DNA of 64,000 nt, taken from IMG/VR virus record IMGVR_UViG_3300007770_001284, positions 124,001 through 188,000 of that record, one strand, 5' to 3'. A program made the position numbers and the translations under genes. The notes below the pieces were generated by a model. That model worked only from the letters and a program-made list of their open reading frames with translations, did no database searches and was not told the DNA's origin. Shown one piece after another: positions 12,735 to 64,000 of the stretch; positions within the stretch are counted from its first letter, which is position 1, and every line of letters begins with the position of its first letter.

Positions 12735-15700
12735 ATGTTTCGGTGCGCGCATTTTGCTGATGTCCACTTTCGTGGGCTGACAAGACATAAAGAATACAGA
12801 GATGTATTTTCAAGATCGTTTGTAGAATTACGAAAGCTACGTCCAGATGCGATCTTTATTGGTGGCGATATTGTCCACTCAAAGACGCAGGGGATCAGTC
12901 CTGAATTAATTCATATTTTGACTTGGTGGTTTAATTCGTTAGCCGAGATTGCTCCTGTTCATGTTATTTTGGGGAACCATGACGGATTGATGTTGAATGA
13001 AGATAGGCTTGACGCTATTACGCCTATTTTAGAAGCATTAGATAATCCAGACATACATCTCTTCAAAGAATCCGGTACATATGATACCGGGGTTGCTGGC
13101 TATAAGTGGAATGTATTCAGCTGTTTTGACATAAGGGGGTGGGATGATGTTGAGCCAGATCCATCTTGTATCAATATCGCAACATTCCACGGTCCTGTGA
13201 ACGGGTCTTTGACCGATCAAGATTGGGAGATTAATGGGGATAGCGTGTCAGTTGATTTTTTCAATAAATTCGATTTTGCTTTTCTCGGTGACATCCACAA
13301 GAGGCAATATTTGACACCAAAAATTGCATATCCTGGTTCAACAATCCAGCAGAATTATGGTGAGACGGTAGAAAAGGGTTTTTTGTTCTGGGAGATTAGG
13401 GATAAAGATGATTTTGATTCAAAGTTTATTCCGCTTAAGAATGAGAAGGCTTTTCGAACGTACCGGTGGAAAGGCACAGTCATAGATACGCTAGATCAAA
13501 TTCCAGAATACGCTTCTGGTGCTAGATTTAGAATTGCGCATGAAGGATTAAACCAAGTTGACTTTAAGCAGCTACAAACAGAGTTACGAGAAACATTTTC
13601 TGCTGAAGAAGTTGTCTCAAAGGATGAATCAAAGGCATTCACTGGGTCAGATGTTGTAATTTCAACCTCTGTAGGTGAAATAAGCAGAACTGATCTACGA
13701 AGTTTCAAATATCAAGATCGGCTTATGACTGACTTTGTATCACGAAATACACTTTCTTCCGACCAACGCGATTCTCTCCGTGCATTGCACAAAGATATTT
13801 TTCATAAGTGCGTTCAACAAGCCAACCAACAAGCACATCAGTGGCGTTTACGAAAGCTCGCGTTTGACAATATGTTCGGGTATGGCGAAGATAACATCAT
13901 AGACTTTGATGCTCTTCACGGTATCACTGGTATTTTTGGTAAAAATCGTTCCGGAAAATCTTCGATTCCTGGGACACTAGTTTACGGATTGTTTAATTCT
14001 TCTGATCGCGGTACGTTGAAAAATTTGCACATTGTGAATAGTCGAAAGAATTTTTGCCGCGCAAGTGTCGATGTCTCGATCGGTAGCAAGATGTATCGTA
14101 TTGACCGGCAAACAATTAAGCGAACAAGCAGAACAGGAGTGGTATCTGCGCCCACGCACTTGAATCTTTACGCGCTAGATGATGACGGGAATATAATAGT
14201 AGACAGTACGGAAGAACAGCGAAGAGAGACTGAAAAAGTTTTACGCGGTCTGGTAGGTACCGTCGATGATTTCTTGATGACGTCATTCGCATCTCAGGGT
14301 GATATGAACGCCTTTATTCGCGAGGGTGCTACAAAGCGAAAAGCAATTCTTACAAGATTTTTAGATCTGCAGATTTTTGATACGATGTTGAGGATGGCAA
14401 AAAATGAAATAACAGAATTAAGAGGCGAGATGAAATCTGCCCCAGATAGAGACTGGAGTACATTGATCACTGAACAGGCAGACGCGTTAATATCTCATAA
14501 GCAAGAAAGAGCAGAGATTGAGGCAGAGTTAGCTGAATTAAAGGAAAAGAGAGATCAACTCAAATTACAGTTGATATCATCTCCGTCCGATACGGTTTAT
14601 ACACAACAAGATATACAGACACAGGTTATTCATTTGCAGACCCTAGAAGAGCGTAACTCTGCTCTGAGCGTAGAGGTGTTACAAACGTGCGAAGAGATGG
14701 ATGTCACTAGAGGAAAAATTACAAAAATTGATATAATTTGTGAACAATTTCCTGTAAAAGAGTTGAAGGAAGAAGCAGAACTACAAAAAGACTTAGCGAA
14801 TCAGATTGAATTAACACAATCAAGACTAGACCTCGAGCAGCAGCGTTTACAGTCACAAACGAAGTCTGCGAAGAAACTTGATACCGTTCCGTGCGGTGAT
14901 CAGTTCCCTAAGTGCCCGTATATTAAAGATGCTCACAAAAGTGCCAAAGAGATCGCCGGACAAAAAAGTGTCATTTCTTCCACCAGGAAAGAATTGGGGG
15001 CGATTAAAAAGAATCTTGAGAAATTAAGGGATAAGGGTCTCGGGGAGAAGCTAGCTAAGTACGAAGAAATGCTGAAAAATGCGCAGCATTTAAGGTTAAA
15101 AAACTCTGACTTAAAGCTCAATTTAAGAGAGCTAGAAAGCGACCAGCAAGCAGTGGTTAGTGAAATTTCACATGGTAAAGAGCTTCTACGTGATATGCGA
15201 CTCCGCTCTGCTGATGAAGAGAAAGATGCAGAAATTATTAAAATGCGGCTTGATCTTAAGCGTTTAGAAAAAAGAATATCAGAAATAGATGCTGAGCGGT
15301 TGTACTTGACAGAACAAATTAGCCTAAGCTCTGCTAGACAAGAAGAGCTACAAACAGAGAAAGAGAAGTTTGGTGCTCTGAAAGACCGCTGGGAAACATA
15401 CTCATTGTTTACGCAGGCAGTCGATAAACGTGGAATTCCACTAACAATCTTATCTCTTCAACTTCCCCGTATCAATGCTGAGCTTACGAAGATTTTGCAG
15501 GGAGTGGTGAATTTCAGCGTTGAGATTGAATCTCGGCTAGACTCAAATAATTTGGACATTTTCATAGATTACGGTGATTCGAAGCGTATTATAGAATGCG
15601 GTTCCGGGATGGAGAAAATGATTTCATCTCTTGCTCTTCGGGTTGCGCTTATTAATATTTGTAATGCCCCAAGAAGTGATGTGTTGATTATTGACGAGGG

Positions 15701-15878
15701 CTTCGGCACGCTAGATGACAAAAACATTGAGGCCTGCTCCCGTTTACTAATGTCTCTTAAGAAATACTTTTCCAATATTCTGATTATTTCACATGTGGAT
15801 GCTGTAAAAGATATCGTAGATAACGTTCTAGACATACAGAAAATAGGGAAAGATGCAAAAATCAGACATTGCGAATAA
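12735..15878 (+). CDS. fused Mre11/SbcD (gp47-like) phosphoesterase + Rad50/SbcC (gp46-like) ABC ATPase
   Basis: Phosphoesterase motifs HFADVH, GGDIVH, LGNHD, FHGPV and LGDIH. Walker A GKNRSGKSS, long coiled coil, Walker B/D-loop IIDEGFGTLD, H-loop IISH. Confidence 0.9.
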   Translation: MFRCAHFADVHFRGLTRHKEYRDVFSRSFVELRKLRPDAIFIGGDIVHSKTQGISPELIHILTWWFNSLAEIAPVHVILGNHDGLMLNEDRLDAITPILEALDNPDIHLFKESGTYDTGVAGYKWNVFSCFDIRGWDDVEPDPSCINIATFHGPVNGSLTDQDWEINGDSVSVDFFNKFDFAFLGDIHKRQYLTPKIAYPGSTIQQNYGETVEKGFLFWEIRDKDDFDSKFIPLKNEKAFRTYRWKGTVIDTLDQIPEYASGARFRIAHEGLNQVDFKQLQTELRETFSAEEVVSKDESKAFTGSDVVISTSVGEISRTDLRSFKYQDRLMTDFVSRNTLSSDQRDSLRALHKDIFHKCVQQANQQAHQWRLRKLAFDNMFGYGEDNIIDFDALHGITGIFGKNRSGKSSIPGTLVYGLFNSSDRGTLKNLHIVNSRKNFCRASVDVSIGSKMYRIDRQTIKRTSRTGVVSAPTHLNLYALDDDGNIIVDSTEEQRRETEKVLRGLVGTVDDFLMTSFASQGDMNAFIREGATKRKAILTRFLDLQIFDTMLRMAKNEITELRGEMKSAPDRDWSTLITEQADALISHKQERAEIEAELAELKEKRDQLKLQLISSPSDTVYTQQDIQTQVIHLQTLEERNSALSVEVLQTCEEMDVTRGKITKIDIICEQFPVKELKEEAELQKDLANQIELTQSRLDLEQQRLQSQTKSAKKLDTVPCGDQFPKCPYIKDAHKSAKEIAGQKSVISSTRKELGAIKKNLEKLRDKGLGEKLAKYEEMLKNAQHLRLKNSDLKLNLRELESDQQAVVSEISHGKELLRDMRLRSADEEKDAEIIKMRLDLKRLEKRISEIDAERLYLTEQISLSSARQEELQTEKEKFGALKDRWETYSLFTQAVDKRGIPLTILSLQLPRINAELTKILQGVVNFSVEIESRLDSNNLDIFIDYGDSKRIIECGSGMEKMISSLALRVALINICNAPRSDVLIIDEGFGTLDDKNIEACSRLLMSLKKYFSNILIISHVDAVKDIVDNVLDIQKIGKDAKIRHCE

Positions 15879-20118: not shown

Positions 20119-20962
20119 ACATAACAAAAAGAGGAATGTAGGAGTTCTCTTCGCTCAATTATCCGAGTACATTTCCTCGGCATTAGTGGAGGGCCGAGAG
20201 CAAGATTCGCATGTTGCTCTAAGCATATTAAAGAGCCACTTTGTGAAGGGCACTGAATTACATCGAGAATTTCGATTATTTCGAGCTTTGGTAACGACTG
20301 AAGTACCCAGCCCCTCGTTGGCTGTCTCTATAATAAATGAAGCAAAGCAAGCTGCACGTAATATGAATATGACTAGATTACGACAAGAAAAGTCTGCCTT
20401 AATAAGAGACATAAATTATCGTATTGCAGAACCAGACTTCTACAGCAGAAGAGTTACAGAATATAAAGCTTTCGCAACAGTCCAGACGCTGTTGAATAAT
20501 TGGCGAAGCAGAGATCCAGATATAACTGTTACCACCAAGTTTGAGAAGTCTCTACACGAGCATCTGTTAAAAGAGAAAGCTACAACAGACCTCACTGCGC
20601 TAGCCACCCCGGATGTGAATAGGCTTGCCGTCCAGATTATGCAAGAAAAAATGCGTGAGCGTTTTGGAAAAGTGTTAAGTGAAGAACAAACGTTGTTGAT
20701 GAAGCAATATGTTTTTTCAAAACAAAAAGATTCATCAAGTGATATTTCTAACAAGCTCGTTGAAATTCAAAAGACGACCCTTGATAAGCTAACCTCGTTT
20801 GAGCGAGCATGCGAGAATGATATTTTGTGTGAGCAAATTGGTGGGGTAAAAGAAAAAATTAAGAATTTGTCTGCTCTTGAGGTAGATGACTCTGTTATAT
20901 CTCAATATTTAACGTTGATGAAACTCACCGAAGAGTTAACCGCGGGAGATGATAATGGCTGA
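20108..20962 (+). CDS. conserved hypothetical head protein (between portal and protease)
   Basis: The likely start MKVKHNKKRNVG at 20108 overlaps the portal stop. The upstream part of the 20030 ORF call is probably an artefact. Helical protein. Confidence 0.7.
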   Translation: MKVKHNKKRNVGVLFAQLSEYISSALVEGREQDSHVALSILKSHFVKGTELHREFRLFRALVTTEVPSPSLAVSIINEAKQAARNMNMTRLRQEKSALIRDINYRIAEPDFYSRRVTEYKAFATVQTLLNNWRSRDPDITVTTKFEKSLHEHLLKEKATTDLTALATPDVNRLAVQIMQEKMRERFGKVLSEEQTLLMKQYVFSKQKDSSSDISNKLVEIQKTTLDKLTSFERACENDILCEQIGGVKEKIKNLSALEVDDSVISQYLTLMKLTEELTAGDDNG

Positions 20963-21575
20963 ACTTAAGCTTTTGACAGAATGGGCCCCCTTTGAATATA
21001 CTAAAGAGCTCGTGGAACAATCTAAATTAGAAAATGATGGTAAGATTGTGATGAAGGGTGTATTGCAAAAGGCTGACACTCTGAATCAGAATGGTAGAGT
21101 GTACCCCCGCGCGATCTTAGATCGCGAGGTGCGAAATTATCAGAAATTTATTCAAGAGAATCGAGCTCTTGGTGAGTGCGATCATCCTGATAGCTCTGTT
21201 GTTGAATTGAAAAATGCATCCCATATTGTGAGAGAAGCGTATATGGATGGTGATATATGTTATGGAATTGTCGAACTTCTCGATACCCCAGCTGGTGAAA
21301 TTCTTCAGAAGCTTGTCGAAGCAGGAGTAACACTTGGGATATCCAGTAGAGGCGTTGGATCAACAAAGCGAAGTGGAGACACTGACGTTGTGCAAGACGA
21401 TTTTCAACTTATTTGTTGGGATTTTGTATCAGAGCCATCAACTCCTGGCGCATTTATGATGCGTGAGGGACGAGTAGTAAGACAGAATGAGTTAGATGAT
21501 GTGTTCAATCAATCAGATAGAATTTATAGAATGTTTAACGAAATATTAGAGTGGGGTGAAGACGATGAGCTCTAA
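20955..21575 (+). CDS. gp21: prohead core protease (T4 gp21-like)
   Basis: GVLQKADTLNQNGRVYP; ALGECDHP; ASH; GISSRGVGS; WDFVSEPSTPGAF. Confidence 0.95.
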   Translation: MAELKLLTEWAPFEYTKELVEQSKLENDGKIVMKGVLQKADTLNQNGRVYPRAILDREVRNYQKFIQENRALGECDHPDSSVVELKNASHIVREAYMDGDICYGIVELLDTPAGEILQKLVEAGVTLGISSRGVGSTKRSGDTDVVQDDFQLICWDFVSEPSTPGAFMMREGRVVRQNELDDVFNQSDRIYRMFNEILEWGEDDEL

Positions 21576-42400: not shown

Positions 42401-44106
42401 TTGCCCTTGCTGCGACTGCGTTAGCTGGTCTTGCAATCGCTGCAATGTTCCCGGCGATGGTGGTCGGGCTGTTAGCCGCCGCGGCATTTCTAACTGTGGG
42501 CGTTGCCATCTTCGCTGGTGCGTTATTCCTTGTTTCAAAGATTCCCCTGCCTGATATTTCGACGACTGCTGAGATATTTGCATCGATAGGAATTGCGCTC
42601 CTGGCTCTTGTTGCGCTCTCCGTTGCTGGTATAGCTTTCGCCGTAATAATGCCCTTGCTCCCTATCATGACAGTCGGCTTGATAGCCGCAGCGGCCTTTT
42701 TTACCGCTGGTGTTACAATTTTCGTGACAGCACTCGCGCAAGCAGAAAAAATGGCAGGTGCGACAATCAGCTCCCCAGCAATACAAGCAATGATAGACAC
42801 CATGATCAACGTGATTCTAGCCATGAAAATGTTGATACCCTTGGCTGTCGTATTTACGGCTCTATCTCCCATTCTTCCGATCTTGGGGATTGGCTTAAGG
42901 GCAATGGGCAAGTTCTTTGTCAGCGCCGCTGAATCAGTGGCATCGATGATTACAGCCGCAGAGGGAATTCCTATGAAAGACCCCGAGGACCTTGCAAAAA
43001 GACTAGAGGTAGTCGGTCACATCGCGAAGGCTCTTCAAGCGCTGGGTGGTCTTGCCATCGACGCCGCGAAATTAGGCGTTGCTTCTGAATTGATGGGTGG
43101 ACCATCGATGTCAGAGGTGTTCGAGGCGATGGGTGGCTTCTTAGATAAGATCAAGGATACTTTGGTCTCCACCGTCGAAACCCTTGTCAAGATGGCGATG
43201 GGTTTCAGCAAGTCGCAACTTGAGAAAGCGTCGGTTGTAGCGTCAGTCGTCGAAGCGGTTGCTAGTTTCGCCGCAGCCATGGCGGAACCGCTGAAAGTGG
43301 TGCAATCAATGACAGGGTTTTTCAACCCCAGCGTAGCGAGTAATATGGCTGTTGTAATCAGTGGTCTCGGTGACATTATGGATATGTTGGCCGAGAAATT
43401 ACCAATGATAATCGGTGGGCTTGTTAAGGCTGGTGAGGGCATTCCTTCGGGCTTTGGAGAGAAAGCAGAAGCGATGAAGATCATGTTTGAGGCCCTTGGT
43501 CCAATGATGAATGCGTTGGCCAAGGTTCAAGAGATCATGGAGGCCTCCCTTGAGGGTATAAACGGCCCGCAGATTGATGAGCTTTTTGGAGGTATGGCCG
43601 GCGCGCTTACAGCAATTACAGGTGTGATGCCTGGAGTCGTCGCGGACTTGAACGCGCTAGTAGGTGCCGAGCAGATGCAGGAGCAGGTTGCGAAACTAGA
43701 GACGATGTTTACAGCCACTGAGGCGTTAGCGAATGTATTAGGAAAATTTGCAGAGTTCGCTGAAGGACAAAGCCCTGGACTCATGGGTAAGGCGGGCGCT
43801 GCCATCGCTGGCCTTTTTGGAGGGGGTGAAGCGGAGACACCTGCCGTCGCGGTGATCAAGTCTATGGTGGATGACATGGTTAAAATCAATGATGTCATGG
43901 CCACTTTACCGGAAGTCAACATCGCCGCGAATCTCCAGCAGATTGCAGACGCTTTTGGTGTTACTGAGAGCATAGCAGTTGAAAATAAGCCAGTTAATAT
44001 TACGATTAACTTGAGCGTCACTATGGATGCGAATAAGGTGGGCGCGGTACTCGTCGACAAGTCAGTTATGACAACGGCCCTCGCCACAGCAGGAGGAGCA
44101 GCATAA
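39448..44106 (+). CDS. tape measure protein
   Basis: 1552 aa, Ala/Gly/Met-rich and helical, with a long hydrophobic middle. Follows tube and chaperone genes. Confidence 0.9.
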   Translation: MADSKELQNQLQIQQGINKVLQDRQKILEKQQKYLSSQVDTAVQLCKALECKGLDDIQQRMKEVQAGLAGAAQEAGDVTDRIGEVNDALDDTNKKAETSVKSFGELVGKIKETNVALAGFAVGAAKGFKSAIADIKMMGGAIGTAINGIFNIGKAIIAIPFQMFSGLLGMANNLASATNVLGEAVEEVRKEFGNLHSNEGKALMSGMRDLQSSASDLGGTGVSLGKVYGVGPGGVAAAMKDLQGIASALGSKFGMLSEEFANSAGEILAFKKGMGLSDDAMSGFATRAISSGKSLTNTLQDVGNYSIQLGDKFGVSSKLISRDMGEMAADFKNFGTLSTKEMAAASVYARKLGIDVKGLQGVIGQFDDFEGAADSVSQLNQAFGIQLDTMAMMNAENPAERIDMMKNAFHEAGKSVEDMTRQERALLAEQTGLSEEALATAFSQENMGTSYEDIAAGADEAEEKQLSQTEVMNKLADTLDRVFNSGRQFTGVFDALAQGFSKGLSDNKEFRDLLKQIREAMQVVFDFGRELGQMFANLLGDMGVFSAIKDLFNIDDIKNLLGIGGTGGVLGIFKKFKDSITGKGDYSPQQMAQELTDLFKNFFAAKSGPLGKLSKMIEQGIIFLGEQIAKMIPWVADKFVAMIHGIIDVVRNPDAVRDAAKDGIGGAMSQAMSQIVPALMSAVGDMIGALVELIGAVLWENKGKLAAVGAVMMAWVFGKMIVLGAMNAIGAAVGAVAVKKLTDWILSMVGDVAEQTEQQMPDPRQMEQMGESVGAGLKSAIEQINQLEEGDMMKAGWKLAVLVASFIPAVIAFSIAIAIAAGIIGMVSWSSLGKLMVTMAVMIPFLALVMIAAKFLDPGTMLSSAVNMALAAVAIGLGMIPFAAALWAVHALIGGIPFKEIAKIMAIMGLAVLAVFVISKLGLLLAPPVTIPGLAFMALAGLAMSVSMVIFAVALRVVHAILAPLPFKEIVKVFAMLGLAIVATIALAATALAGLAIAAMFPAMVVGLLAAAAFLTVGVAIFAGALFLVSKIPLPDISTTAEIFASIGIALLALVALSVAGIAFAVIMPLLPIMTVGLIAAAAFFTAGVTIFVTALAQAEKMAGATISSPAIQAMIDTMINVILAMKMLIPLAVVFTALSPILPILGIGLRAMGKFFVSAAESVASMITAAEGIPMKDPEDLAKRLEVVGHIAKALQALGGLAIDAAKLGVASELMGGPSMSEVFEAMGGFLDKIKDTLVSTVETLVKMAMGFSKSQLEKASVVASVVEAVASFAAAMAEPLKVVQSMTGFFNPSVASNMAVVISGLGDIMDMLAEKLPMIIGGLVKAGEGIPSGFGEKAEAMKIMFEALGPMMNALAKVQEIMEASLEGINGPQIDELFGGMAGALTAITGVMPGVVADLNALVGAEQMQEQVAKLETMFTATEALANVLGKFAEFAEGQSPGLMGKAGAAIAGLFGGGEAETPAVAVIKSMVDDMVKINDVMATLPEVNIAANLQQIADAFGVTESIAVENKPVNITINLSVTMDANKVGAVLVDKSVMTTALATAGGAA

Positions 44107-57087: not shown

Positions 57088-58494
57088 ATGACATCACCAG
57101 CTTTTGCATTGCTTGACTCGGTCCAACCGGGTCAATTCTCCCAATACAACAAGAATTTTCAAGAGAAAATTTTGCAAGGGCTACTATCAGACAAACAATG
57201 GGCAGTACAGATGGTCGAGATTATGCGACCAGATTTTTTTGAGCTCAGGTACCTTGAGTACCTTTGTGAGAAGTACTTTGCGTATTTTTCAGAGTACAGA
57301 TGTTTTCCGACGCAGCTCCTTCTTATAAGCATTATCAAAGATGCGCTGAATGAGGAAGGTGATGTCTTGCTACGGGATCAAATTGTTTCTTACCTTGTGA
57401 GAATGAAGGAAAATCCCAACCCAAATGATCTTGCATATGTTAAAGAAAAGTCTCTTGACTTTTGTAAAAGGCAAGCGTTTAAAGAGGCTCTTGAAGAGTC
57501 GGTTAATTTGATTTCTACAGGTGAGTTCGAGAGCGTAATTACGCTAATGAAGAATGCGGTGTCAATTGGTCTTCCAAACACTGTAGGTCATGATTTTTTT
57601 GAAGATATGGAAGCTAGATTTCAAAAGATTAATCGATGTGTTTGCCCAACAGGGATTTATGAGCTAGACTCGAAAGATATATTGAACGGCGGCTTGGGAA
57701 GAGGAGAAATTGGCGTTGTTACTGCAAATACCGGTGTTGGAAAATCACATTGGCTAGTGGCAATGGGTGCGAACGCAATGCGATGCGGAAAAAATGTACT
57801 TCACTATACATTTGAATTGACAGAGCAAGCTGTTGGCCTGCGATACGACGCAAATCTTTGTAACATATCTGCTTCCAACGTGATAGATGAGAAAGAAGTT
57901 GTTCGAGACTTTTACGAGAAAAATGATGAGCTTGGTAGGTTGATTATAAAAGAATACCCAACTGGGTCAGCGTCGGTTGTTACGATTAAGAACCACATAG
58001 AGAAATTGTCACTTAGAAATTTTAAGCCAAGTGTAATAATCGTAGATTATGCCGACATTATGCGGTCTACACGATCATATGATTCTCTACGTCATGAATT
58101 AAAGCTAATTTACGAGGAGCTTAGAAACCTTGCAATGGAACTGAATATTCCAGTCTGGACAGCCTCACAAGCGAACAGGGATTCTGCGAATTCCGACATT
58201 GTTGGGCTAGAGAACATGTCAGAAGCATACGGGAAAGCTATGGTAGCCGACTTTGTTGTCTCACTCTCTAGAAAGGCAACAGAAAAAGCCTCCGGTTCAG
58301 GCCGTCTATTCATCGCAAAAAATAGGGCCGGAAAAGATGGGATCGTTTTTCCTATTCACATCGACACGGCTCTTTCTAAGATAGCTATATTGGATGAAGA
58401 TGTGTCAACACTCGCAGAAGCTGTTGAAAATGATGAAAAAGAAATAAAAAGCGCGCTTAGAGAAAAATGGAAGTCAATCACCAACATTGGGTAA
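57088..58494 (+). CDS. gp41: DnaB-like replicative helicase (T4 gp41-like)
   Basis: GEIGVVTANTGVGKS; YTFEL; LIIKEYPTG; IIVDYAD; VWTASQANR; IAKNRAG. Confidence 0.93.
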   Translation: MTSPAFALLDSVQPGQFSQYNKNFQEKILQGLLSDKQWAVQMVEIMRPDFFELRYLEYLCEKYFAYFSEYRCFPTQLLLISIIKDALNEEGDVLLRDQIVSYLVRMKENPNPNDLAYVKEKSLDFCKRQAFKEALEESVNLISTGEFESVITLMKNAVSIGLPNTVGHDFFEDMEARFQKINRCVCPTGIYELDSKDILNGGLGRGEIGVVTANTGVGKSHWLVAMGANAMRCGKNVLHYTFELTEQAVGLRYDANLCNISASNVIDEKEVVRDFYEKNDELGRLIIKEYPTGSASVVTIKNHIEKLSLRNFKPSVIIVDYADIMRSTRSYDSLRHELKLIYEELRNLAMELNIPVWTASQANRDSANSDIVGLENMSEAYGKAMVADFVVSLSRKATEKASGSGRLFIAKNRAGKDGIVFPIHIDTALSKIAILDEDVSTLAEAVENDEKEIKSALREKWKSITNIG

Positions 58495-58505
58495 AGGGTA
58501 ATACG

Positions 58506-61019
58506 ATGGCATGTGATTACGAAACTGCGATAAAAGAGTCACTAGAATTTTTTGAAGGTGATGAATTAGCTGCTAACGTTGTGGTCACTAAATACCTTCT
58601 AACGGATGCTGACGGAAATTATCTTGAATCATCCCCAGCCCAAATGCATGCTCGACTAGCGACGGAATTTCATAGAATCGAATCAAAATATGAAAACCCA
58701 TTGACATATGATGAAATTTACGAACTGCTGGATGGTTTTAGTCAGGTAGTCCCACAAGGTTCCCCAATGGCGGGAATCGGGAATGATTGTAAGCTACAGT
58801 CTATATCTAATTGTTTCGTTATTCCCGCTCCAGAAGACAGTTACGGCGGAATTCTCTCCACAGATCAGCGACTAGTCCAAATTGCTAAGCGTAGAGGAGG
58901 GGTTGGGTTTGATATAAGCACAATTCGCCCGAAGGGCCTATCTACTGCGAATGCTGCAAAAACCACTGATGGAATCGAGGTTTTTATGGATCGTTTTTCA
59001 AACTCATGCCGGGAAGTTGCTCAAGGCGGCCGTCGGGGTGCTTTAATGTTAACGATATCAGTCCATCATCCCCAGATTAGGGATTTTATAAAGATCAAGC
59101 AAGATTTAACTCGTGTGACCGGCGCAAATATTTCTGTAAGAATTTCTGACGAGTTTATGAGTGCCGTACGTGATAATTCAACTGTGCATTTACGTTGGCC
59201 TGTAGACTCTAAAAAGCCGGAAATTTCTGAGTATGTGAATGCTTCAGAATTGTGGCATGAGATTATTGAGAGTGCACATGCAACAGCTGAGCCGGGGTTA
59301 TTATTCTGGGACACTGCAAAAAAGATGACCCCAGCCGACATCTATAAAGATGAAGGGTTTAGTTCATCTTCGACGAACCCATGCGGCGAAATTATCTTGT
59401 CTCCGTATGACAGTTGTCGATTGATGCTTATTAATTTGACAAGCTTTGTACAAAACAAATGGCAAAAATCGTCAAAATTTGATTTTGAAGGTTTTGGAAA
59501 TGCTGTCCAAAAAGCGCAACGCTTGATGGACGATATGGTTGATTTGGAAATTGAGCAAGTTGAAAAAATTATTGCAAAAATTGATGGTGATCCAGAGTCT
59601 GCTGAAGTCAAGCAAATCGAAAAAAGCTTGTGGCAAAATATCAAGACAATGGCACAGCAGGGCCGACGAACCGGGCTTGGTATAACGGGCTTGGGAGATG
59701 TATTAGCGATGCTTGGTCATCGTTATGGAAGCAAGAAGAGTATTAAGGTTACAGAAGAGATTTATAAGGGCCTCGCCGTAAATTCATATTATTCGTCAGC
59801 TGTTTTGGCAAAAGAGCGAGGTGCTTTTCCCGTCCACGACCATGCTAAAGAAGATGGTCATCCATTTCTAGAGAGAATTTGGAAAGAAAAGCCTGAGATT
59901 AAGAAGTTGAATGAACAGTTCGGTCGTAGAAATATTTCCCTGACTACAACAGCACCGGCCGGATCAGTCTCAGTGTTAACACAAACGACATCTGGGATCG
60001 AGCCAGCTTACATGCTTCATTATACCCGTAGAAAAAAGATAACGGGCCAGGATGAGGATGCTCAAGTTGATTTTATTGATGATAGCGGTGACAAGTGGCA
60101 AGAATATGCAGTTTATCATCATGGCTTTAGGCAGTGGATGAATGCCACCAATGTCGATGGCGGTACAACTATGGACAATGAAAAGCTTGTTGCAATGAGC
60201 CCGTACGCCGGCTCAACAGCAGCAGAAATTGATTGGGTGGCGAAAGTAAAGATGCAGGCCGCCGCACAAAAATGGGTTTGCCACGCCATTTCAAATACTA
60301 CAAATTTACCTGCAGATGCAGATGTTGAAACAGTTAAGAACGTTTACATGACAGGATGGGAATCTGGATGTAAAGGAGTGACAGTTTATAGAGACGGTTG
60401 TCGAGCCGGCGTTCTTGTTGCTGCTGAGGAGGAGGACGTGTCCGCTCGTGATAGCGAGAGGATTATTACGCGGTCTGCCCCGAGACGTCCCATCTTACTT
60501 GAGTGTGATATCCATCAAGCCACTATTAAGGGTGAAGAATGGACAGTGATGGTGGGTCTCATGGAAGGTACGCCCTATGAGGTCATTGGCGGATTGTCTG
60601 AGTACATTGAAATTCCTCGTCGATATGAGCGCGGGAAAATAAGGAGACGCGCTCGGAAATCTATGCCATCGAAATATGACTTAATATTCGGCGAAAATGG
60701 TAACGAAATAGCTATAAAAGATATTGTGAAAGTCTTTGACAACCCCAACCACTCAGCGTTTACTAGAACCATTTCTCTTGCTCTACGCCACGGCGTTCCC
60801 ACCCAGTATCTGGTTGAACAATTATTGAAGGATAGAGACGCTGATCTTTTTTGCTTTTCAAAAGTTATTGCAAGATGCCTTAAAAAGTACATCGCAGACG
60901 GCACAAAAGTAAGCAATGGCGTCCTTGATTGTGAGTGTGAGGTTCCCGAATATAGCAACATTGTGTATCAGGAAGGGTGTGCAACTTGTCTTACCTGTGG
61001 CACCGCGAAGTGTGGATGA
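58506..61019 (+). CDS. nrdJ: class II (adenosylcobalamin-dependent) ribonucleotide reductase
   Basis: ISNCFV; RRGGGVG; QGGRRGA; TNPCGEI; TAPAGSVS; GCKGVTVYRDG (no class-I YY pair). C-terminal TSCPD-like/Zn-ribbon CATCLTCG. No nrdB nearby. Confidence 0.92.
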   Translation: MACDYETAIKESLEFFEGDELAANVVVTKYLLTDADGNYLESSPAQMHARLATEFHRIESKYENPLTYDEIYELLDGFSQVVPQGSPMAGIGNDCKLQSISNCFVIPAPEDSYGGILSTDQRLVQIAKRRGGVGFDISTIRPKGLSTANAAKTTDGIEVFMDRFSNSCREVAQGGRRGALMLTISVHHPQIRDFIKIKQDLTRVTGANISVRISDEFMSAVRDNSTVHLRWPVDSKKPEISEYVNASELWHEIIESAHATAEPGLLFWDTAKKMTPADIYKDEGFSSSSTNPCGEIILSPYDSCRLMLINLTSFVQNKWQKSSKFDFEGFGNAVQKAQRLMDDMVDLEIEQVEKIIAKIDGDPESAEVKQIEKSLWQNIKTMAQQGRRTGLGITGLGDVLAMLGHRYGSKKSIKVTEEIYKGLAVNSYYSSAVLAKERGAFPVHDHAKEDGHPFLERIWKEKPEIKKLNEQFGRRNISLTTTAPAGSVSVLTQTTSGIEPAYMLHYTRRKKITGQDEDAQVDFIDDSGDKWQEYAVYHHGFRQWMNATNVDGGTTMDNEKLVAMSPYAGSTAAEIDWVAKVKMQAAAQKWVCHAISNTTNLPADADVETVKNVYMTGWESGCKGVTVYRDGCRAGVLVAAEEEDVSARDSERIITRSAPRRPILLECDIHQATIKGEEWTVMVGLMEGTPYEVIGGLSEYIEIPRRYERGKIRRRARKSMPSKYDLIFGENGNEIAIKDIVKVFDNPNHSAFTRTISLALRHGVPTQYLVEQLLKDRDADLFCFSKVIARCLKKYIADGTKVSNGVLDCECEVPEYSNIVYQEGCATCLTCGTAKCG

Positions 61020-61026
61020 ATATTTA
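61020..61026 (+). promoter_or_regulatory. ATADTTA motif (putative late promoter element)
   Basis: ATATTTA, only 5 nt before the iscU ATG. Confidence 0.3.
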
Positions 61027-61031
61027 GGGTT

Positions 61032-61418
61032 ATGGCGTATTCAGACAAAGTTATAGATCATTTTGACAACCCACGAAACATAGGTTCGCTGGACAAAGAT
61101 GCTTTCGATGTGGGTACAGGAATCGTCGGCGCCCCAGAATGTGGGGATGTAATGAAACTGCAATTAAAAATTAGTAATAACGGTGTTATTGAAGATGCAA
61201 AATTTAAAACATTTGGTTGCGGATCTGCAATAGCGTCTAGTAGTTTGGTTACAGAGTGGGTAAAGGGAAAGAGCATCGAGGATGCTAATAAAATTAAGAA
61301 TTCTGAAATAGCTCTAGAGCTTTGTTTACCACCAGTTAAAATTCACTGCTCTGTATTGGCTGAAGATGCCATTAAAGCTGCGATTAAAGACTATAGAGAC
61401 AAGTATGACAAGGAATGA
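61032..61418 (+). CDS. iscU: Fe-S cluster scaffold IscU
   Basis: MAYSDKVIDHFDNPRN; GAPECGDVM; FKTFGCGSAIASSS; LPPVKIHCSVLAEDA. Confidence 0.97.
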   Translation: MAYSDKVIDHFDNPRNIGSLDKDAFDVGTGIVGAPECGDVMKLQLKISNNGVIEDAKFKTFGCGSAIASSSLVTEWVKGKSIEDANKIKNSEIALELCLPPVKIHCSVLAEDAIKAAIKDYRDKYDKE

Positions 61419-61668
61419 AATAGAAGAGTTTATTGCCGCCGATATAAATCCAGCTCTTGAAATGCATGGTGGTTATCTTTCGATAGAGGGTTATAACGAA
61501 GATGATAAGATTCTTCATGTTGTAATGGGTGGTGGCTGTCAAGGGTGCGCATCTTCTAGCATAACGTTGAAATTACAAATAGAAGCTACACTTAAAGAAC
61601 AATTTCCAGAGCTAACTCAGGTCATAGATACAACAGATCACACTTCCGGTATAAATCCGTACTATTAG
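61405..61668 (+). CDS. Nfu/NifU-C-terminal Fe-S carrier domain protein
   Basis: INPALEMHGG...MGGGCQGCASSSITLK...IE...D.TDH..G.NPYY. The ATG at 61405 overlaps the end of iscU. Confidence 0.92.
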   Translation: MTRNEIEEFIAADINPALEMHGGYLSIEGYNEDDKILHVVMGGGCQGCASSSITLKLQIEATLKEQFPELTQVIDTTDHTSGINPYY

Positions 61669-61679
61669 GTTAACACAAC

Positions 61680-62012
61680 ATGGCAATTACGATGACAGAT
61701 TTTGCGATTGATCGAATTTCATCATTGATTGTAAGAAATCAAATGACGGTTGAAGAAGCTTATTTAAAGATCGGCCTCCGCGGGGGTGGTTGTTCTGGCT
61801 ATTCTTATTCATTTGATTTCGTTACAGAGCCTGACGAACATGATAAGGTGCTTGATTTCGATTCAGTGAAGATTTGCATTGACAAAAAGTCTTATCTGTT
61901 TTTGAACGGGACGGAAATTGATTACGAAGAAACACCGTTTAAGTCTGGAATAAAATTAAATAACCCGCTTGTAACCAGAACCTGTGGCTGCGGCGAATCG
62001 GTCGCGTTTTAG
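61680..62012 (+). CDS. iscA: A-type Fe-S carrier IscA/HesB
   Basis: GLRGGGCSGYSY; DKKSYLFLNGTEIDY; NP...TCGCGES. Confidence 0.95.
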   Translation: MAITMTDFAIDRISSLIVRNQMTVEEAYLKIGLRGGGCSGYSYSFDFVTEPDEHDKVLDFDSVKICIDKKSYLFLNGTEIDYEETPFKSGIKLNNPLVTRTCGCGESVAF

Positions 62013-62020
62013 GAGAGAAA

Positions 62021-62623
62021 GTGCATTGGACATCAGAAATTGATAACAAGATAGAGAAAGTTGAGTTACGAAAAAGCCCGCTCATTGTGAGAGTCAACAA
62101 ATTCGATGAAGAATCCGCTAAGAAATTTAGCGATGAGATGGCTTTGGCTCACAATACAGGACAAGACATTATTCCAGTGGTCATTGATTCCTACGGTGGC
62201 CAAGTTTATAGTCTTATGGCAATGATAAGTGCGATTAAGCATTCAGAGCTTCCGGTAGCGACGATTGTTGAGGGAAAAGCAATGTCATGTGGCGCTATTT
62301 TGTTTTCTTTCGGTGAACAAGGCCGCAGGTTCATGGACCCAGACGCGACTTTAATGATTCATGACGTTTCTTCAATGGACATGGGGAAAGTGGAAGAGCT
62401 AAAGGCTGGTGCCAAGGAAGCTGATCGGTTAAATGAAATTGTTTATAAGATGATGGCGCAAAACTGCGGAAAAGCAGATGATTATTTTATGCACATTGTT
62501 GATAAAAAGAAACATGCTGACTGGTTCTTAGATGCAAAGCAGGCGAAGCGGCATGGGTTAGCAAATCAGCTCCGTGTTCCAAAGTTAAGCATAAAAGTTA
62601 CTGTTGACATTGATTTTGAATAA
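62021..62623 (+). CDS. clpP: ClpP-family serine protease
   Basis: IDSYGGQV; GKAMSCGA (Ser); LMIHDVS (His); DWFLDAKQAKRHGL (Asp). Confidence 0.88.
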   Translation: MHWTSEIDNKIEKVELRKSPLIVRVNKFDEESAKKFSDEMALAHNTGQDIIPVVIDSYGGQVYSLMAMISAIKHSELPVATIVEGKAMSCGAILFSFGEQGRRFMDPDATLMIHDVSSMDMGKVEELKAGAKEADRLNEIVYKMMAQNCGKADDYFMHIVDKKKHADWFLDAKQAKRHGLANQLRVPKLSIKVTVDIDFE

Positions 62624-63036
62624 TGCTAGCTTACAGAACCAGGCGACTGGTAAAAACAGAAGACTTAAATTCAAGGGGAACTTTGTTCGGTGGTCGACTC
62701 CTGGAGTGGATTGATGAAGAGGCTTCGATTTTTTGCTTTTGTCAATTAGGGACTAGAAATATCGTAACAGTTCACATGTCAGAGATCAATTTTAGACACC
62801 CTGCAAAATTGGGTGATGTTATTGAATTCGGTACTGACATGGTTTCATTTGGCAACTCTTCCATAACACTTAAAATGATTGTAAGGAATAAGAGAACAAA
62901 GAAGACTCTTTTATCTGTTGAGAAGATTGTATTTGTGGCTTTGAATGAATTTGGTGAACCAGCGCCGCATGGAGTAACGAAATTTTCAGAACGAGGTAGA
63001 TGGAAACAACTTAAAAAAGGGAACGAAGATGGATAA
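62623..63036 (+). CDS. hot-dog-fold acyl-CoA thioesterase
   Basis: VKTEDLNSRGTLFGGRLLEWIDEEA; SEINFRHPAKLGDVIEF; IVFVALNEFGEP. Confidence 0.9.
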   Translation: MLAYRTRRLVKTEDLNSRGTLFGGRLLEWIDEEASIFCFCQLGTRNIVTVHMSEINFRHPAKLGDVIEFGTDMVSFGNSSITLKMIVRNKRTKKTLLSVEKIVFVALNEFGEPAPHGVTKFSERGRWKQLKKGNEDG

Positions 63037-63979
63037 AGACTTTTATAATAGTTCAAGTGCGGCAAAGCTGGGGTGGGAACCATCGTGGTTCGGCTGTGAT
63101 GAGTTCGATATTGATCTTGTGAAAGCAGTCAAGAAGTGGCAACGCGGTAACGGACTGACAGCAGACGGTCTTGTTGGCCCCATGACATATCGTAGAGTGT
63201 GGACAGAAAGAGAAGCAAGCATTTCTGACTGGATGGATACTCTTCCGTTAAAGAAAAGTTATAGACAAGGCGAAAAATATATTGTTCATAATGGTCATTT
63301 TATCCCTATAGAGTGGGATAATGTAATTTTATGGGACGAACCCAGTGGCCATAAGTCTAAGAAGGGATGTTACACAGATTATTCTGGGAGAGAAGATAGG
63401 GCTCCTACGTTTTTTGTTAATCATTGGGACGTGTGCCTAAGCGCAGATAGCTGCGCGAAAGTCTTGAATAAGCGCGGTATCTCTGTGCATTTTTTAATTG
63501 ATAATGATGGAACGATTTTTCAAATGCTGGATACGCAACACAAGGCATGGCACGCTGGTATACCGAATGGTGTCGGGGGAAATTCAAAAGGGATTGGTGT
63601 GGAAATTTCGAATGCTTATTATACAAAGTACCAAGACTGGTATGTTAAGCATGGCTATGGCGAACGGCCCATTCAAGAGCATGGTTACGTTCATGGCTCC
63701 ACGCGGGAGCCATTTCTAGATTTCTATCCAATCCAACTTGAGGCTTTAAAGGCGCTATGGAAGGCTGTCCACGTCGGGTTAGGCATTCCACTGGAGTATC
63801 CGAAAAATTCGTCGGGGCATATCGAGACCAGCGTGCATAAAGAATGTGTACGAGGAAAATTTCAGGGATTCTGTAATCACTACAATTTTATTAGAACAAA
63901 AATTGATTGCGCTGGCCTGGATCTTCCCGCTCTTTTAGAGGAAGTTAAAAAAACGCCGATGTACTGTTTAGATAAATAG
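63029..63979 (+). CDS. endolysin: peptidoglycan-binding domain + N-acetylmuramoyl-L-alanine amidase
   Basis: VKAVKKWQRGNGLTADGLVGPMT (PG-binding-1). Amidase_2 motifs VNHWD, SVHFLID, AWHAG, IGVEISN and NHYNF...KIDC. Confidence 0.88.
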   Translation: MDKDFYNSSSAAKLGWEPSWFGCDEFDIDLVKAVKKWQRGNGLTADGLVGPMTYRRVWTEREASISDWMDTLPLKKSYRQGEKYIVHNGHFIPIEWDNVILWDEPSGHKSKKGCYTDYSGREDRAPTFFVNHWDVCLSADSCAKVLNKRGISVHFLIDNDGTIFQMLDTQHKAWHAGIPNGVGGNSKGIGVEISNAYYTKYQDWYVKHGYGERPIQEHGYVHGSTREPFLDFYPIQLEALKALWKAVHVGLGIPLEYPKNSSGHIETSVHKECVRGKFQGFCNHYNFIRTKIDCAGLDLPALLEEVKKTPMYCLDK

Positions 63980-64000
63980 CATATAATTGGTGTCATCAGG

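What the first reader, a model, noticed from the sequence alone, without database searches (positions are those of the whole stretch)
61032..62012. Phage-encoded Fe-S cluster assembly mini-operon (IscU scaffold + Nfu carrier + IscA carrier) without a desulfurase
Seen: three adjacent genes with all cluster ligands intact (IscU three Cys plus His and the LPPVK chaperone-binding motif; Nfu CxxC; IscA C...CGC). They are coupled directly behind nrdJ. No IscS, ferredoxin or HscA/B is in the window. Established: IscU builds clusters with IscS and releases them via HscA binding LPPVK; Nfu and A-type carriers deliver them; class II RNR itself needs no Fe-S. Inference: the phage supplies the scaffold-to-carrier relay while borrowing host IscS/HscAB, redirecting cluster flux to phage Fe-S clients (e.g. 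radical-SAM or Cas4-like enzymes elsewhere in the genome) or sustaining host B12/respiratory metabolism. A three-component relay in a virus is a candidate undescribed auxiliary system.
Basis: partly seen in the sequence, partly recalled or inferred. Interest (0 to 1): 0.72.

Follow-up and report, generated by a model that had tools for sequence, protein, structure and literature searches.

The report
Phage iron-sulfur scaffold and carrier operon
A marine T4-like jumbo phage carries a conserved three-gene operon (IscU scaffold, small Nfu carrier, A-type carrier) for building and delivering iron-sulfur clusters but no sulfur-donating enzyme; this extends an already described class of phage metabolic genes and is not a new kind of system.

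Summary
Window 61032-62012 encodes an IscU (above NCBIfam's IscU cut-off), an 87-aa Nfu-domain protein and an A-type carrier. All cluster ligands are present and the genes sit directly behind a class II RNR (nrdJ).

- **Not an assembly artefact.** The same junctions occur in assemblies from several studies and in a strain about 3-4% diverged.
- **Phage context.** The record is a 254.7-kb T4-like jumbo myovirus from seawater.
- **Conserved as a unit.** The trio recurs in diverged marine phage contigs, once in a different order and context. Ligands are invariant and synonymous sites are saturated.
- **No desulfurase.** None of 95 viral IscU loci has IscS beside IscU, against 78 of 80 cellular loci. 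The phage record also lacks HscA/B, ferredoxin, frataxin and glutaredoxin.
- **Candidate clients.** The phage encodes an XPD/DinG-like helicase and a Cas4/Dna2-like nuclease, each with four invariant cysteines. It has no radical-SAM genes.

The "undescribed system" claim is overstated. IscU and A-type carriers in marine T4-like phage genomes, alongside Cas4 and ClpP, were described in 2017. Most viral IscU loci I sampled (54 of 80) already pair IscU with an A-type carrier. The new elements are the standalone NfuA-type Nfu and the fixed trio. I rate it a new variant of a known kind, of moderate interest.

The parts
58467..61019 (+). nrdJ, class II (adenosylcobalamin) ribonucleotide reductase with a Cys-rich C-terminal tail; the upstream neighbour in the same tightly packed gene string
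   Evidence: TIGR02504 at 503 bits against a cut-off of 400. PF02867 plus a weak TSCPD hit at residues 759-788. The FEN-DnaB-NrdJ-IscU order is conserved in L001, L006, L012, L101, L105, L111 and L219.
61032..61418 (+). iscU, Fe-S assembly scaffold (128 aa)
   Evidence: TIGR01999 at 221.3 bits against a cut-off of 192.4. Gapless alignment to E. coli and H. influenzae IscU with Cys37, Asp39, Cys63, His105, Cys106 and LPPVK. These residues are invariant in 12 viral homologues. pN/pS is 0.13-0.26 with synonymous sites saturated.
61405..61668 (+). nfu, standalone NfuA-type Nfu domain (87 aa); its start overlaps the iscU stop by 14 nt
   Evidence: PF01106 at 69.1 bits. It matches positions 108-190 of the 190-position NfuA model TIGR03341 at 76.7 bits, far below the cut-off of 269. 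The CxxC aligns to solved Nfu proteins. The GGCxGCAS motif is invariant in 12 viral homologues. The family comprises 61 metagenome-only clusters.
61680..62012 (+). A-type Fe-S carrier (IscA/SufA/ErpA family, subclass unresolved; 110 aa)
   Evidence: TIGR00049 at 102.7 bits against a cut-off of 58.8. It falls below the SufA, IscA and ErpA equivalog cut-offs. Cys38, Cys102 and Cys104 align to E. coli IscA Cys35, Cys99 and Cys101 and are invariant in viral homologues.
62021..62623 (+). ClpP-like serine protease (200 aa); conserved downstream neighbour and not the head-maturation protease
   Evidence: PF00574 at 91.5 bits. It is below all NCBIfam ClpP cut-offs. A gp21-type prohead protease (PF03420) lies at 20949-21575 between the portal and major head genes. 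It follows the cassette in L006, L012, L019, L101, L105, L111 and L219.
62623..63036 (+). 4HBT-fold thioesterase; next gene in the string (context only)
   Evidence: PF03061 at 54.4 bits; phrog_18230.

Best explanation
This is an auxiliary Fe-S cluster assembly and delivery operon of a marine T4-like jumbo phage. Shown: three intact, selectively maintained genes for an ISC-type scaffold (IscU), a small NfuA-type Nfu carrier and an A-type carrier. They are packed with 12-nt, -14-nt and 11-nt junctions in the replication/nucleotide module, and the phage has no cysteine desulfurase, HscA/B, ferredoxin or frataxin. Inferred: during infection the phage IscU docks on the host's IscS, which implies a host with an ISC system, most likely a proteobacterium. 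It receives persulfide sulfur and iron and builds [2Fe-2S]/[4Fe-4S] clusters. Host HscA/HscB release them through the retained LPPVK motif. The clusters then pass to the phage Nfu and A-type carrier, which insert them into apo-proteins. The likeliest dedicated clients are the phage's own DNA enzymes with four invariant Cys: an XPD/DinG/YoaA-like helicase and a Cas4/Dna2-like nuclease. Host Fe-S enzymes probably benefit too. The selective benefit would be to keep Fe-S supply up when host isc expression falls after takeover, or when iron is scarce or oxidative stress is high in surface seawater. From my own knowledge, NfuA and A-type carriers matter most in E. coli under just those conditions.
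For: Family membership and ligands.
Real locus: the exact IscU protein lies on at least 24 contigs from ENA, JGI and Logan with the same gene order. Contigs from a second study cover the stretch with no differences, and a strain about 3-4% diverged from a third study bridges the nrdJ/iscU and iscU/nfu/iscA/clpP junctions.
Phage context: portal, major head, sheath, gp21-type protease, T4-type terminase, gp32 and UvsX-like RecA.
Conservation as a unit: IscU-Nfu-IscA occurs in L101, L105, L106, L107, L108, L109, L111, L034 and L219 at 45-65% Nfu identity. L220 has the order IscA-IscU-Nfu with different neighbours. Ligands are invariant. pN/pS is 0.13-0.51 with pS 0.6-0.97.
Systematic lack of a desulfurase: 0 of 95 viral loci against 78 of 80 cellular loci have IscS next to IscU. 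No Aminotran_5 was found in this record or in five other jumbo-phage records, one of them rated 100% complete.
IscS docking: ipSAE 0.64 against a best control of 0.00. That mark was reached by 51 of 78 solved complexes and 2 of 108 mismatched pairs. The interface uses IscU residues 3, 11, 31-42 and 59-64.
Clients: the helicase at G000:C1:33156-34784 has Helicase_C_2, with best hits to YoaA, DinG and XPD. Cys107, 115, 135 and 139 lie between Walker A and the DEAH box and are conserved in 19-20 of 20 homologues. The nuclease at C1:85939-86811 is PF12705, with Cys29, 276, 279 and 287 invariant in 18 homologues, some of which also carry the Dna2 domain. In L109 a homologous nuclease lies about 950 nt downstream of the trio.
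Against: Nothing here is biochemical: no cluster binding, transfer or expression was measured. The only 'metatranscriptomic' run that holds the locus is flagged as probably DNA.
The host is unknown and the IscU tree gives no donor.
The IscS-IscU fold may be recalled from the solved E. coli complex, so it shows likeness and not binding.
The link to clients is weak. G004 has both client homologues but no Nfu in its 78%. G001 (100% complete, with IscU and a carrier) has neither client.
Parts of the cassette are dispensable. L012 has IscU alone, L006 has an Nfu homologue without the CxxC, and L034 has its carrier in two frames.
The record is 75% complete, so genes reported absent could lie in the missing quarter.
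Confidence: 0.62

Rival explanations
1. Host-metabolism booster only. The cassette raises Fe-S supply to host respiratory, TCA and biosynthetic enzymes to sustain energy and dNTP production under iron limitation, and phage proteins are not its specific targets. This is the standard reading of viral Fe-S assembly genes as auxiliary metabolic genes.
For: This is the published interpretation of viral IscU and A-type-carrier genes (PMC5332604, PMC10721903). IscU plus a carrier occurs in many unrelated viral contigs (54 of 80), including a 100%-complete 374-kb record that lacks the helicase and nuclease homologues. A related 308-kb phage contig carries malate synthase and isocitrate lyase about 1 kb downstream of the cassette block. 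From my own knowledge, that shunt is associated with iron limitation in marine bacteria.
Against: The cassette sits in the replication module, not among other metabolic genes. The phage encodes two DNA enzymes with Fe-S-type Cys quartets. In L109 the nuclease lies beside the trio. The two readings are not mutually exclusive.
Confidence: 0.28
2. Regulatory or competitive hijack. Over-produced phage IscU and carriers alter the host's Fe-S status sensors (IscR, Fur) or monopolise IscS, diverting sulfur away from host pathways such as tRNA thiolation, and do not mainly serve cluster delivery.
For: IscS is a shared sulfur hub (PMC11446229 abstract). E. coli Fur activation requires IscU (PMC11001641 title and abstract). 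The phage IscU is predicted to occupy the IscS docking site.
Against: A decoy would not need every cluster ligand, the LPPVK motif and two downstream carriers kept invariant across diverged lineages. No direct evidence exists.
Confidence: 0.06
3. A functional tie to the adjacent class II RNR. The scaffold and carriers load a metal or cluster site in the NrdJ C-terminal IscU-like domain and Cys-rich tail.
For: The nrdJ-iscU adjacency is conserved in this lineage. Of 80 viral IscU loci, 16 have an RNR-like gene within 6 kb, against 0 of 80 cellular loci within 4 kb. Long class II RNR C-termini contain an IscU-like fold plus a zinc finger (bioRxiv 10.1101/2022.04.23.489257). There is a weak TSCPD hit at NrdJ 759-788.
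Against: [quoted passage not shown] The trio also occurs away from nrdJ (L220). The adjacency is expected if both genes simply belong to the nucleotide/replication module. The TSCPD hit is below the Pfam cut-off.
Confidence: 0.03
4. Artefact: a host isc operon fragment joined to phage DNA by mis-assembly, or a recent non-functional passenger.
For: The IscU is about 75-80% identical to many bacterial IscUs.
Against: Identical junctions appear in independent assemblies and in a diverged strain. There is no IscS, HscBA or Fdx beside it, unlike 78 of 80 cellular loci. It is conserved across diverged phages under purifying selection.
Confidence: 0.01

Closest known systems
Viral Fe-S cluster assembly auxiliary genes (IscU and A-type carrier) of marine T4-like environmental viral genomes (Nishimura et al. 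2017, PMC5332604)
   Same: These are marine T4-like phage genomes that carry IscU and/or an A-type carrier without the rest of the ISC operon. Cas4-like nucleases and ClpP are noted in the same genomes.
   Different: That paper does not mention any Nfu/NifU-domain gene (0 occurrences) or a fixed three-gene operon. This genome has no radical-SAM, glutaredoxin or PaaD-like genes.
Bacterial ISC operon (iscR-iscS-iscU-iscA-hscB-hscA-fdx)
   Same: IscU is an equivalog-level match with all functional residues. An A-type carrier follows it on the same strand, as in bacteria.
   Different: IscR, IscS, HscB, HscA and Fdx are all absent. An Nfu gene is inserted between iscU and the carrier. The carrier is only 39% identical to a Colwellia IscA and scores below the IscA, SufA and ErpA cut-offs.
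NfuA of Gammaproteobacteria (degenerate A-type domain fused to an Nfu domain)
   Same: The phage Nfu matches the C-terminal Nfu half of the NfuA model to its last position, with the CxxC. A full-length NfuA-like fusion exists in a related viral contig (L110).
   Different: The phage protein lacks the N-terminal domain. The neighbouring A-type protein is a separate gene, lies downstream instead of N-terminal, and keeps all three Cys, whereas (from my own knowledge) the NfuA A-type domain is degenerate.
NifU-domain genes of cyanophages P-SSM2, P-SSM5 and P-TIM68
   Same: A small Nfu-type domain is encoded by a T4-like marine phage.
   Different: Identity is only 31-36%. No IscU was found in those records, and none of them matched the A-type carrier.

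Membership tests
IscU (TIGR01999, ISC-type scaffold) | Score above the curated equivalog cut-off | tested here: met
   221.3 bits against a cut-off of 192.4.
IscU (TIGR01999, ISC-type scaffold) | Cluster ligands Cys37, Cys63 and Cys106 plus Asp39 and His105, and the HscA-binding LPPVK motif | tested here: met
   Gapless alignment to E. coli (2l4x) and H. influenzae (1q48) IscU. These residues are invariant in 12 viral homologues.
IscU (TIGR01999, ISC-type scaffold) | Binds the cysteine desulfurase IscS | tested here: inconclusive
   Predicted complex with E. coli IscS: ipSAE 0.64 against a best control of 0.00. The mark was reached by 51 of 78 solved and 2 of 108 mismatched pairs, and the result may reflect memory of the solved complex. 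The host IscS is unknown.
IscU (TIGR01999, ISC-type scaffold) | Assembles [2Fe-2S]/[4Fe-4S] clusters | not testable with these tools
   This needs reconstitution and spectroscopy.
Complete ISC system (operon) | A cysteine desulfurase IscS encoded with the scaffold | tested here: not met
   No Aminotran_5 in the record. 0 of 95 viral loci against 78 of 80 cellular loci.
Complete ISC system (operon) | HscB/HscA chaperones and Fdx | tested here: not met
   No HSP70, HSCB_C or Fer2. tblastn with Colwellia HscB, HscA and Fdx found nothing.
Nfu domain (PF01106) | Domain score above the cut-off, and the CxxC motif | tested here: met
   69.1 bits against a cut-off of 27. The CxxC aligns to 2z51, 2jnv and 1veh and is invariant in 12 viral homologues.
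NfuA (TIGR03341) | Two-domain architecture (N-terminal A-type-like domain plus Nfu) and a score above the cut-off | tested here: not met
   76.7 bits against a cut-off of 269; only model positions 108-190 are matched.
A-type carrier (TIGR00049 / PF01521) | Score above the cut-off, and three conserved Cys (C-x(n)-C-G-C) | tested here: met
   102.7 bits against a cut-off of 58.8. Cys38, Cys102 and Cys104 align to E. coli IscA Cys35, Cys99 and Cys101.
IscA, SufA or ErpA equivalogs | Score above the respective equivalog cut-off | tested here: not met
   SufA 98.1 against 136.2; IscA 90.7 against 150.6; ErpA 79.4 against 117. The subclass is unresolved.
Phage auxiliary metabolic gene | Encoded inside a bona fide phage genome, flanked by phage genes, and conserved among related phages | tested here: met
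   Hallmark genes, flanks, relatives.
Phage auxiliary metabolic gene | Expressed during infection | tested here: inconclusive
   A contig from a library labelled metatranscriptomic spans the nrdJ end, iscU and the nfu start (60909-61601), but the run is flagged as probably DNA.
XPD/DinG-type Fe-S helicase (candidate client, G000:C1:33156-34784) | Helicase_C_2 domain, and four Cys between Walker A and the DEAH box | tested here: met
   PF13307 at 71.9 bits. XPD hits at E 3e-10. Cys107, 115, 135 and 139 are conserved in 19-20 of 20 homologues. It is below the YoaA and DinG equivalog cut-offs. The cluster itself was not tested.
Cas4/AddB/Dna2-type 'iron-staple' nuclease (candidate client, G000:C1:85939-86811) | PD-(D/E)XK core plus one N-terminal and three C-terminal Cys | tested here: met
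   PF12705 at 72.3 bits. Cys29, 276, 279 and 287 are invariant in 18 homologues, some with PF08696 Dna2. There was no significant PDB sequence hit. The cluster itself was not tested.

The most novel reading that the evidence does not exclude
A clade of marine jumbo phages has evolved a self-contained delivery branch: a standalone Nfu plus a fully liganded A-type carrier acting as a split, two-cluster analogue of NfuA, fed by a phage IscU. This branch would be dedicated to maturing the phage's own Fe-S DNA enzymes (XPD/DinG-like helicase, Cas4/Dna2-like nuclease), with the adjacent ClpP-like protease acting on the same pathway. That would be a virus-specific Fe-S trafficking route, as opposed to a general boost to the host.
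Probability: 0.15. Interest if true: 0.6.

Novelty: new variant of a known kind. Interest (0 to 1): 0.38.

Why it matters
Fe-S supply is a bottleneck for respiration and DNA metabolism in iron-poor surface oceans. Here a widespread lineage of marine jumbo phages keeps a scaffold and two carriers under purifying selection and never the desulfurase. That pinpoints which steps of Fe-S biogenesis limit a phage during infection: scaffold and delivery capacity, not sulfur mobilisation. It also gives a compact, testable three-protein set. The IscU is close enough to E. coli IscU for complementation and transfer assays, and the same genome supplies two candidate viral client enzymes. It does not open a new category, because viral IscU and A-type-carrier genes are already recognised.

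Tried and rejected
- **IscU phylogeny to find a donor or host.** With 126 columns only 5 of 154 inner branches were well supported. The syntenic viral IscUs cluster loosely and no donor could be named.
- **GenBank phage records.** Many hits are host contigs filed as phage, for example the multi-contig 'Acinetobacter phage MD-2021a' and Salmonella WGS records. Genuine phage hits carry single genes only.
- **Searches of the whole record.** No match for radical SAM, HSP70, Fer2, glutaredoxin, HscB, frataxin, DUF59/PaaD-like or Aminotran_5.
- **Cys-motif scan.** The only CxxxCxxC hit is a thymidine kinase-like zinc site. The HhH-GPD glycosylase just outside the window has no Fe-S loop cysteines.
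- **Sigma-70 promoter and terminator scan and the T4 late-promoter motif.** Promoter-like sites and the late-promoter motif were no more frequent than in shuffles. Terminator-like sites were about twice the shuffle mean (13 found, 6.3 expected), but none lies in the short gaps between nrdJ and clpP. Co-transcription is therefore inferred from spacing only.
- **dN/dS.** Synonymous sites are saturated, so only upper bounds (pN/pS) can be given.
- **PDB sequence search for the nuclease.** Nothing significant.
- **ClpP-like gene as the head protease.** Rejected, because a gp21-type protease lies in the head module.
- **Expression.** The 'metatranscriptomic' run is flagged as probably DNA, so I make no claim.
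Full report
**1. What is there**

Window 61032-62012 holds three + strand ORFs, exactly as described.
- **IscU (61032-61418, 128 aa).** It scores 221.3 bits on NCBIfam's IscU equivalog (cut-off 192.4) and 178.9 bits on PF01592.
- **Nfu-domain protein.** The gene callers of three public collections start it at the ATG at 61405 (87 aa), 14 nt inside iscU. The first in-frame ATG at 61366 is not used. It scores 69.1 bits on PF01106. It matches only the C-terminal half (positions 108-190) of the NfuA model, far below that model's cut-off.
- **A-type carrier (61680-62012, 110 aa).** It scores 102.7 bits on TIGR00049 (cut-off 58.8) but falls below the IscA, SufA and ErpA equivalog cut-offs, so its subclass is open.

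- IscU aligns without a gap to E. coli and H. influenzae IscU, with Cys37, Asp39, Cys63, His105, Cys106 and LPPVK.
- The Nfu CxxC aligns with that of plant and human Nfu proteins.
- Carrier Cys38, Cys102 and Cys104 align with E. coli IscA Cys35, Cys99 and Cys101.

The upstream gene is a true adenosylcobalamin RNR: TIGR02504 at 503 bits against a cut-off of 400. The junctions are 12 nt (nrdJ-iscU), -14 nt (iscU-nfu), 11 nt (nfu-carrier) and 8 nt (carrier-clpP-like). Promoter-like sites are no more frequent than chance. Terminator-like sites run at about twice the shuffle mean, but none falls in these gaps. Co-transcription is inferred from spacing, not shown.

**2. It is a phage and the locus is not an assembly artefact**

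The window is bases 124001-188000 of a 254,743-bp IMG/VR virus record, linear and rated 75% complete. The window and its flanks carry these phage genes:
- a T4-type large terminase, a portal, a gp21-type prohead protease, a major head protein and a tail sheath;
- an SbcCD-like nuclease, gp32, a RecA/UvsX-like recombinase, a FEN and DnaB;
- pieces of PolA and a PolIII-alpha.

This is a marine T4-like jumbo myovirus.

The exact IscU protein is found on at least 24 contigs in ENA, JGI and Logan assemblies, all with the same gene order. Laying contigs on 58400-63100 gave three independent lines:
- a 13.5-kb contig with no differences;
- two contigs from a second study that cover the whole stretch with no differences;
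- contigs from a third study, about 3-4% diverged, that bridge the nrdJ/iscU and iscU/nfu/carrier/clpP junctions.

All holding runs are marine or seawater metagenomes.

**3. Distribution and selection**

IMG/VR holds more than 590 contigs with a close IscU relative. I examined the 80 best.
- 54 have an A-type carrier within 1.5 kb on the same strand.
- 16 have an RNR-like gene in the locus.
- Only 3 have an Nfu.

None of the 95 viral loci I fetched has IscS next to IscU. Of 80 cellular loci fetched the same way, 78 do, and 72 also have HscA. So 'IscU plus carrier, never the desulfurase' is a general viral pattern and not a peculiarity of this window.

The full trio is narrower.
- It occurs in the window's own lineage and in diverged relatives: L101, L105, L106, L107, L108 (same contig as L019), L109, L111, L034 and L219. 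Nfu identity among these is 45-65%.
- In a 274-kb contig it occurs in the order carrier-IscU-Nfu with unrelated neighbours (L220). The three genes therefore travel together independently of nrdJ and clpP.
- The standalone 87-aa Nfu family has 61 clusters, all from metagenomes, on contigs up to 308 kb.
- The 120 nearest carrier relatives are likewise all unnamed metagenomic proteins.

Ligand residues are invariant in every intact viral homologue. Synonymous sites are saturated (pS 0.60-0.97), while pN is 0.11-0.19 for IscU, 0.23-0.36 for Nfu and 0.11-0.29 for the carrier. That means purifying selection on all three.

The cassette is nevertheless not indivisible:
- L012 has IscU followed directly by the ClpP-like gene.
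- L006 has an Nfu homologue that has lost the CxxC.
- L034 has its carrier split over two frames.
- L102-L104 have carrier-Nfu without IscU.
- L110 has a fused NfuA-like protein.

**4. What is missing, and candidate clients**

The whole record has no match to Aminotran_5, HSP70, HSCB_C, Fer2, frataxin, glutaredoxin, DUF59 or Radical_SAM. tblastn with a Colwellia IscR, IscS, HscB, HscA and Fdx set finds only the carrier. Five other jumbo-phage records, one of them 374 kb and rated 100% complete, also lack Aminotran_5.

A cysteine-cluster scan of all ORFs, followed by Pfam, gave two credible Fe-S clients.
- **Helicase (G000:C1:33156-34784, 542 aa).** It has Helicase_C_2 and ResIII domains. Its best matches are YoaA, DinG and archaeal XPD. 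Cys107, 115, 135 and 139 are conserved in 19-20 of 20 viral homologues down to 43% identity. They lie between Walker A and the DEAH box, where this family holds its 4Fe-4S domain.
- **Nuclease (C1:85939-86811, 290 aa).** It is a PD-(D/E)XK nuclease. Cys29, Cys276, Cys279 and Cys287 are invariant in 18 homologues of 49-72% identity, some of which also carry the Dna2 domain. This is the one-plus-three 'iron staple' layout of Cas4, AddB and Dna2.
- In L109 a homologous nuclease with the same Cys layout lies about 950 nt downstream of the trio.

Co-occurrence is not strict. G004 has both clients but no Nfu in its 78%, and G001 has IscU and a carrier but neither client.

**5. Mechanism**

Shown: an intact ISC-type scaffold and two carrier types, selectively maintained, with no sulfur donor, chaperones or reductant in the phage.

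Inferred:
- The phage IscU uses host IscS. A fold of E. coli IscS with the phage IscU scored ipSAE 0.64 against a best control of 0.00. That mark was reached by 51 of 78 solved complexes and 2 of 108 mismatched pairs. The interface involves IscU residues 3, 11, 31-42 and 59-64. Because the E. coli complex is solved, this shows likeness and not proof of binding.
- Release would go through host HscA/HscB via LPPVK. Delivery would go through the phage Nfu and carrier to the phage helicase and nuclease, and probably also to host enzymes.
- From my own knowledge of E. coli, NfuA and A-type carriers become important under iron starvation and oxidative stress. That fits a surface-ocean phage.
- A related phage carries malate synthase and isocitrate lyase just downstream of the same block, which points the same way.

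The rivals are in the Rival explanations section: a host-only booster, a regulatory or IscS-competition effect, a tie to the NrdJ C-terminal IscU-like domain, and an artefact.

**6. Comparison with what is known**

- Nishimura et al. 2017 (PMC5332604) reported 6 marine environmental viral genomes with IscU and 14 with an A-type carrier, several of them T4-like. They noted Cas4, radical-SAM enzymes, Grx, PaaD and ClpP in the same genomes, and proposed support of both host and viral Fe-S proteins. They cite earlier virome work that identified sufA and iscU as auxiliary metabolic genes.
- PHROGs lists phrog_8429 as 'NifU-like Fe-S cluster assembly protein' in its 'moron, auxiliary metabolic gene and host takeover' category.
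- NifU-domain genes are annotated in cyanophages P-SSM2 and P-SSM5.
- I did not find Nfu mentioned with IscU and a carrier in any phage paper. The two PHROG families that match the Nfu, and the one that matches the carrier, are labelled 'unknown function'.

The finding is therefore a new variant of a known kind. The standalone NfuA-type Nfu and the fixed three-gene unit are new. The concept is not.

**7. Verdict**

The novelty is modest. Interest 0.38.

Noticed in passing
window 59317-59925 (inside nrdJ): In the diverged strain of run X7, a contig replaces 607 nt of nrdJ with 1537 other letters. This may be an intein or homing-endonuclease-type insertion in the RNR gene of a sister strain.
   Followed up: no
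L219:7195-9993 and L218:7197-9995: In a related 308-kb phage contig, malate synthase and isocitrate lyase (glyoxylate shunt) follow the IscU-Nfu-carrier-ClpP-amidase block. An aceBA operon in a marine viral genome was reported in PMC5332604.
   Followed up: partly
window 62021-62623: A ClpP-like protease is conserved immediately downstream of the Fe-S genes, even where Nfu and the carrier are missing (L012). The phage has a separate gp21-type prohead protease at 20949-21575, so this is an extra protease of unknown role.
   Followed up: partly
L006:6388-6626; L034:6618-6930; L012:6001-6400: The cassette decays in relatives. L006 has an Nfu homologue without the CxxC. L034 has its A-type carrier in two reading frames. 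L012 has IscU only.
   Followed up: yes
L110:5671-6273: A viral contig encodes a 200-aa fusion of an A-type-like domain and an Nfu domain (NfuA architecture), followed by a separate A-type carrier.
   Followed up: partly
window 61323-61325 (IscU residue 98): There is an extra cysteine directly before LPPVK (Glu in E. coli). It is shared with L006, L012 and L034 but not with the other relatives.
   Followed up: partly
window 60741-61019 (NrdJ C-terminus): There is a weak TSCPD (IscU-like fold) hit at residues 759-788 and a Cys-rich tail (Cys822, 824, 838, 841, 844, 849). A preprint reports IscU-like domains plus zinc fingers in long class II RNR C-termini.
   Followed up: partly
window 63987-64000 and beyond (G000:C1:187987-189015): A GlnII-like glutamine synthetase (269 bits against a cut-off of 500) starts at the window's end. 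A small HhH-GPD glycosylase without Fe-S loop cysteines lies at C1:189694-190167.
   Followed up: partly
window 12735-15878: A single 1047-aa ORF combines an SbcD-like N-terminus with an SbcC-like C-terminus.
   Followed up: no
G000:C1:13661-14344, 42527-42991, 83334-83792 (outside the window): Three ORFs with clustered cysteines have no Pfam match. They could be further metal or Fe-S proteins.
   Followed up: no
G000:C1:69306-70535 and 78887-79636 (outside the window): A UDP-glucose/GDP-mannose dehydrogenase and a PfkB-family kinase are encoded by the phage.
   Followed up: no
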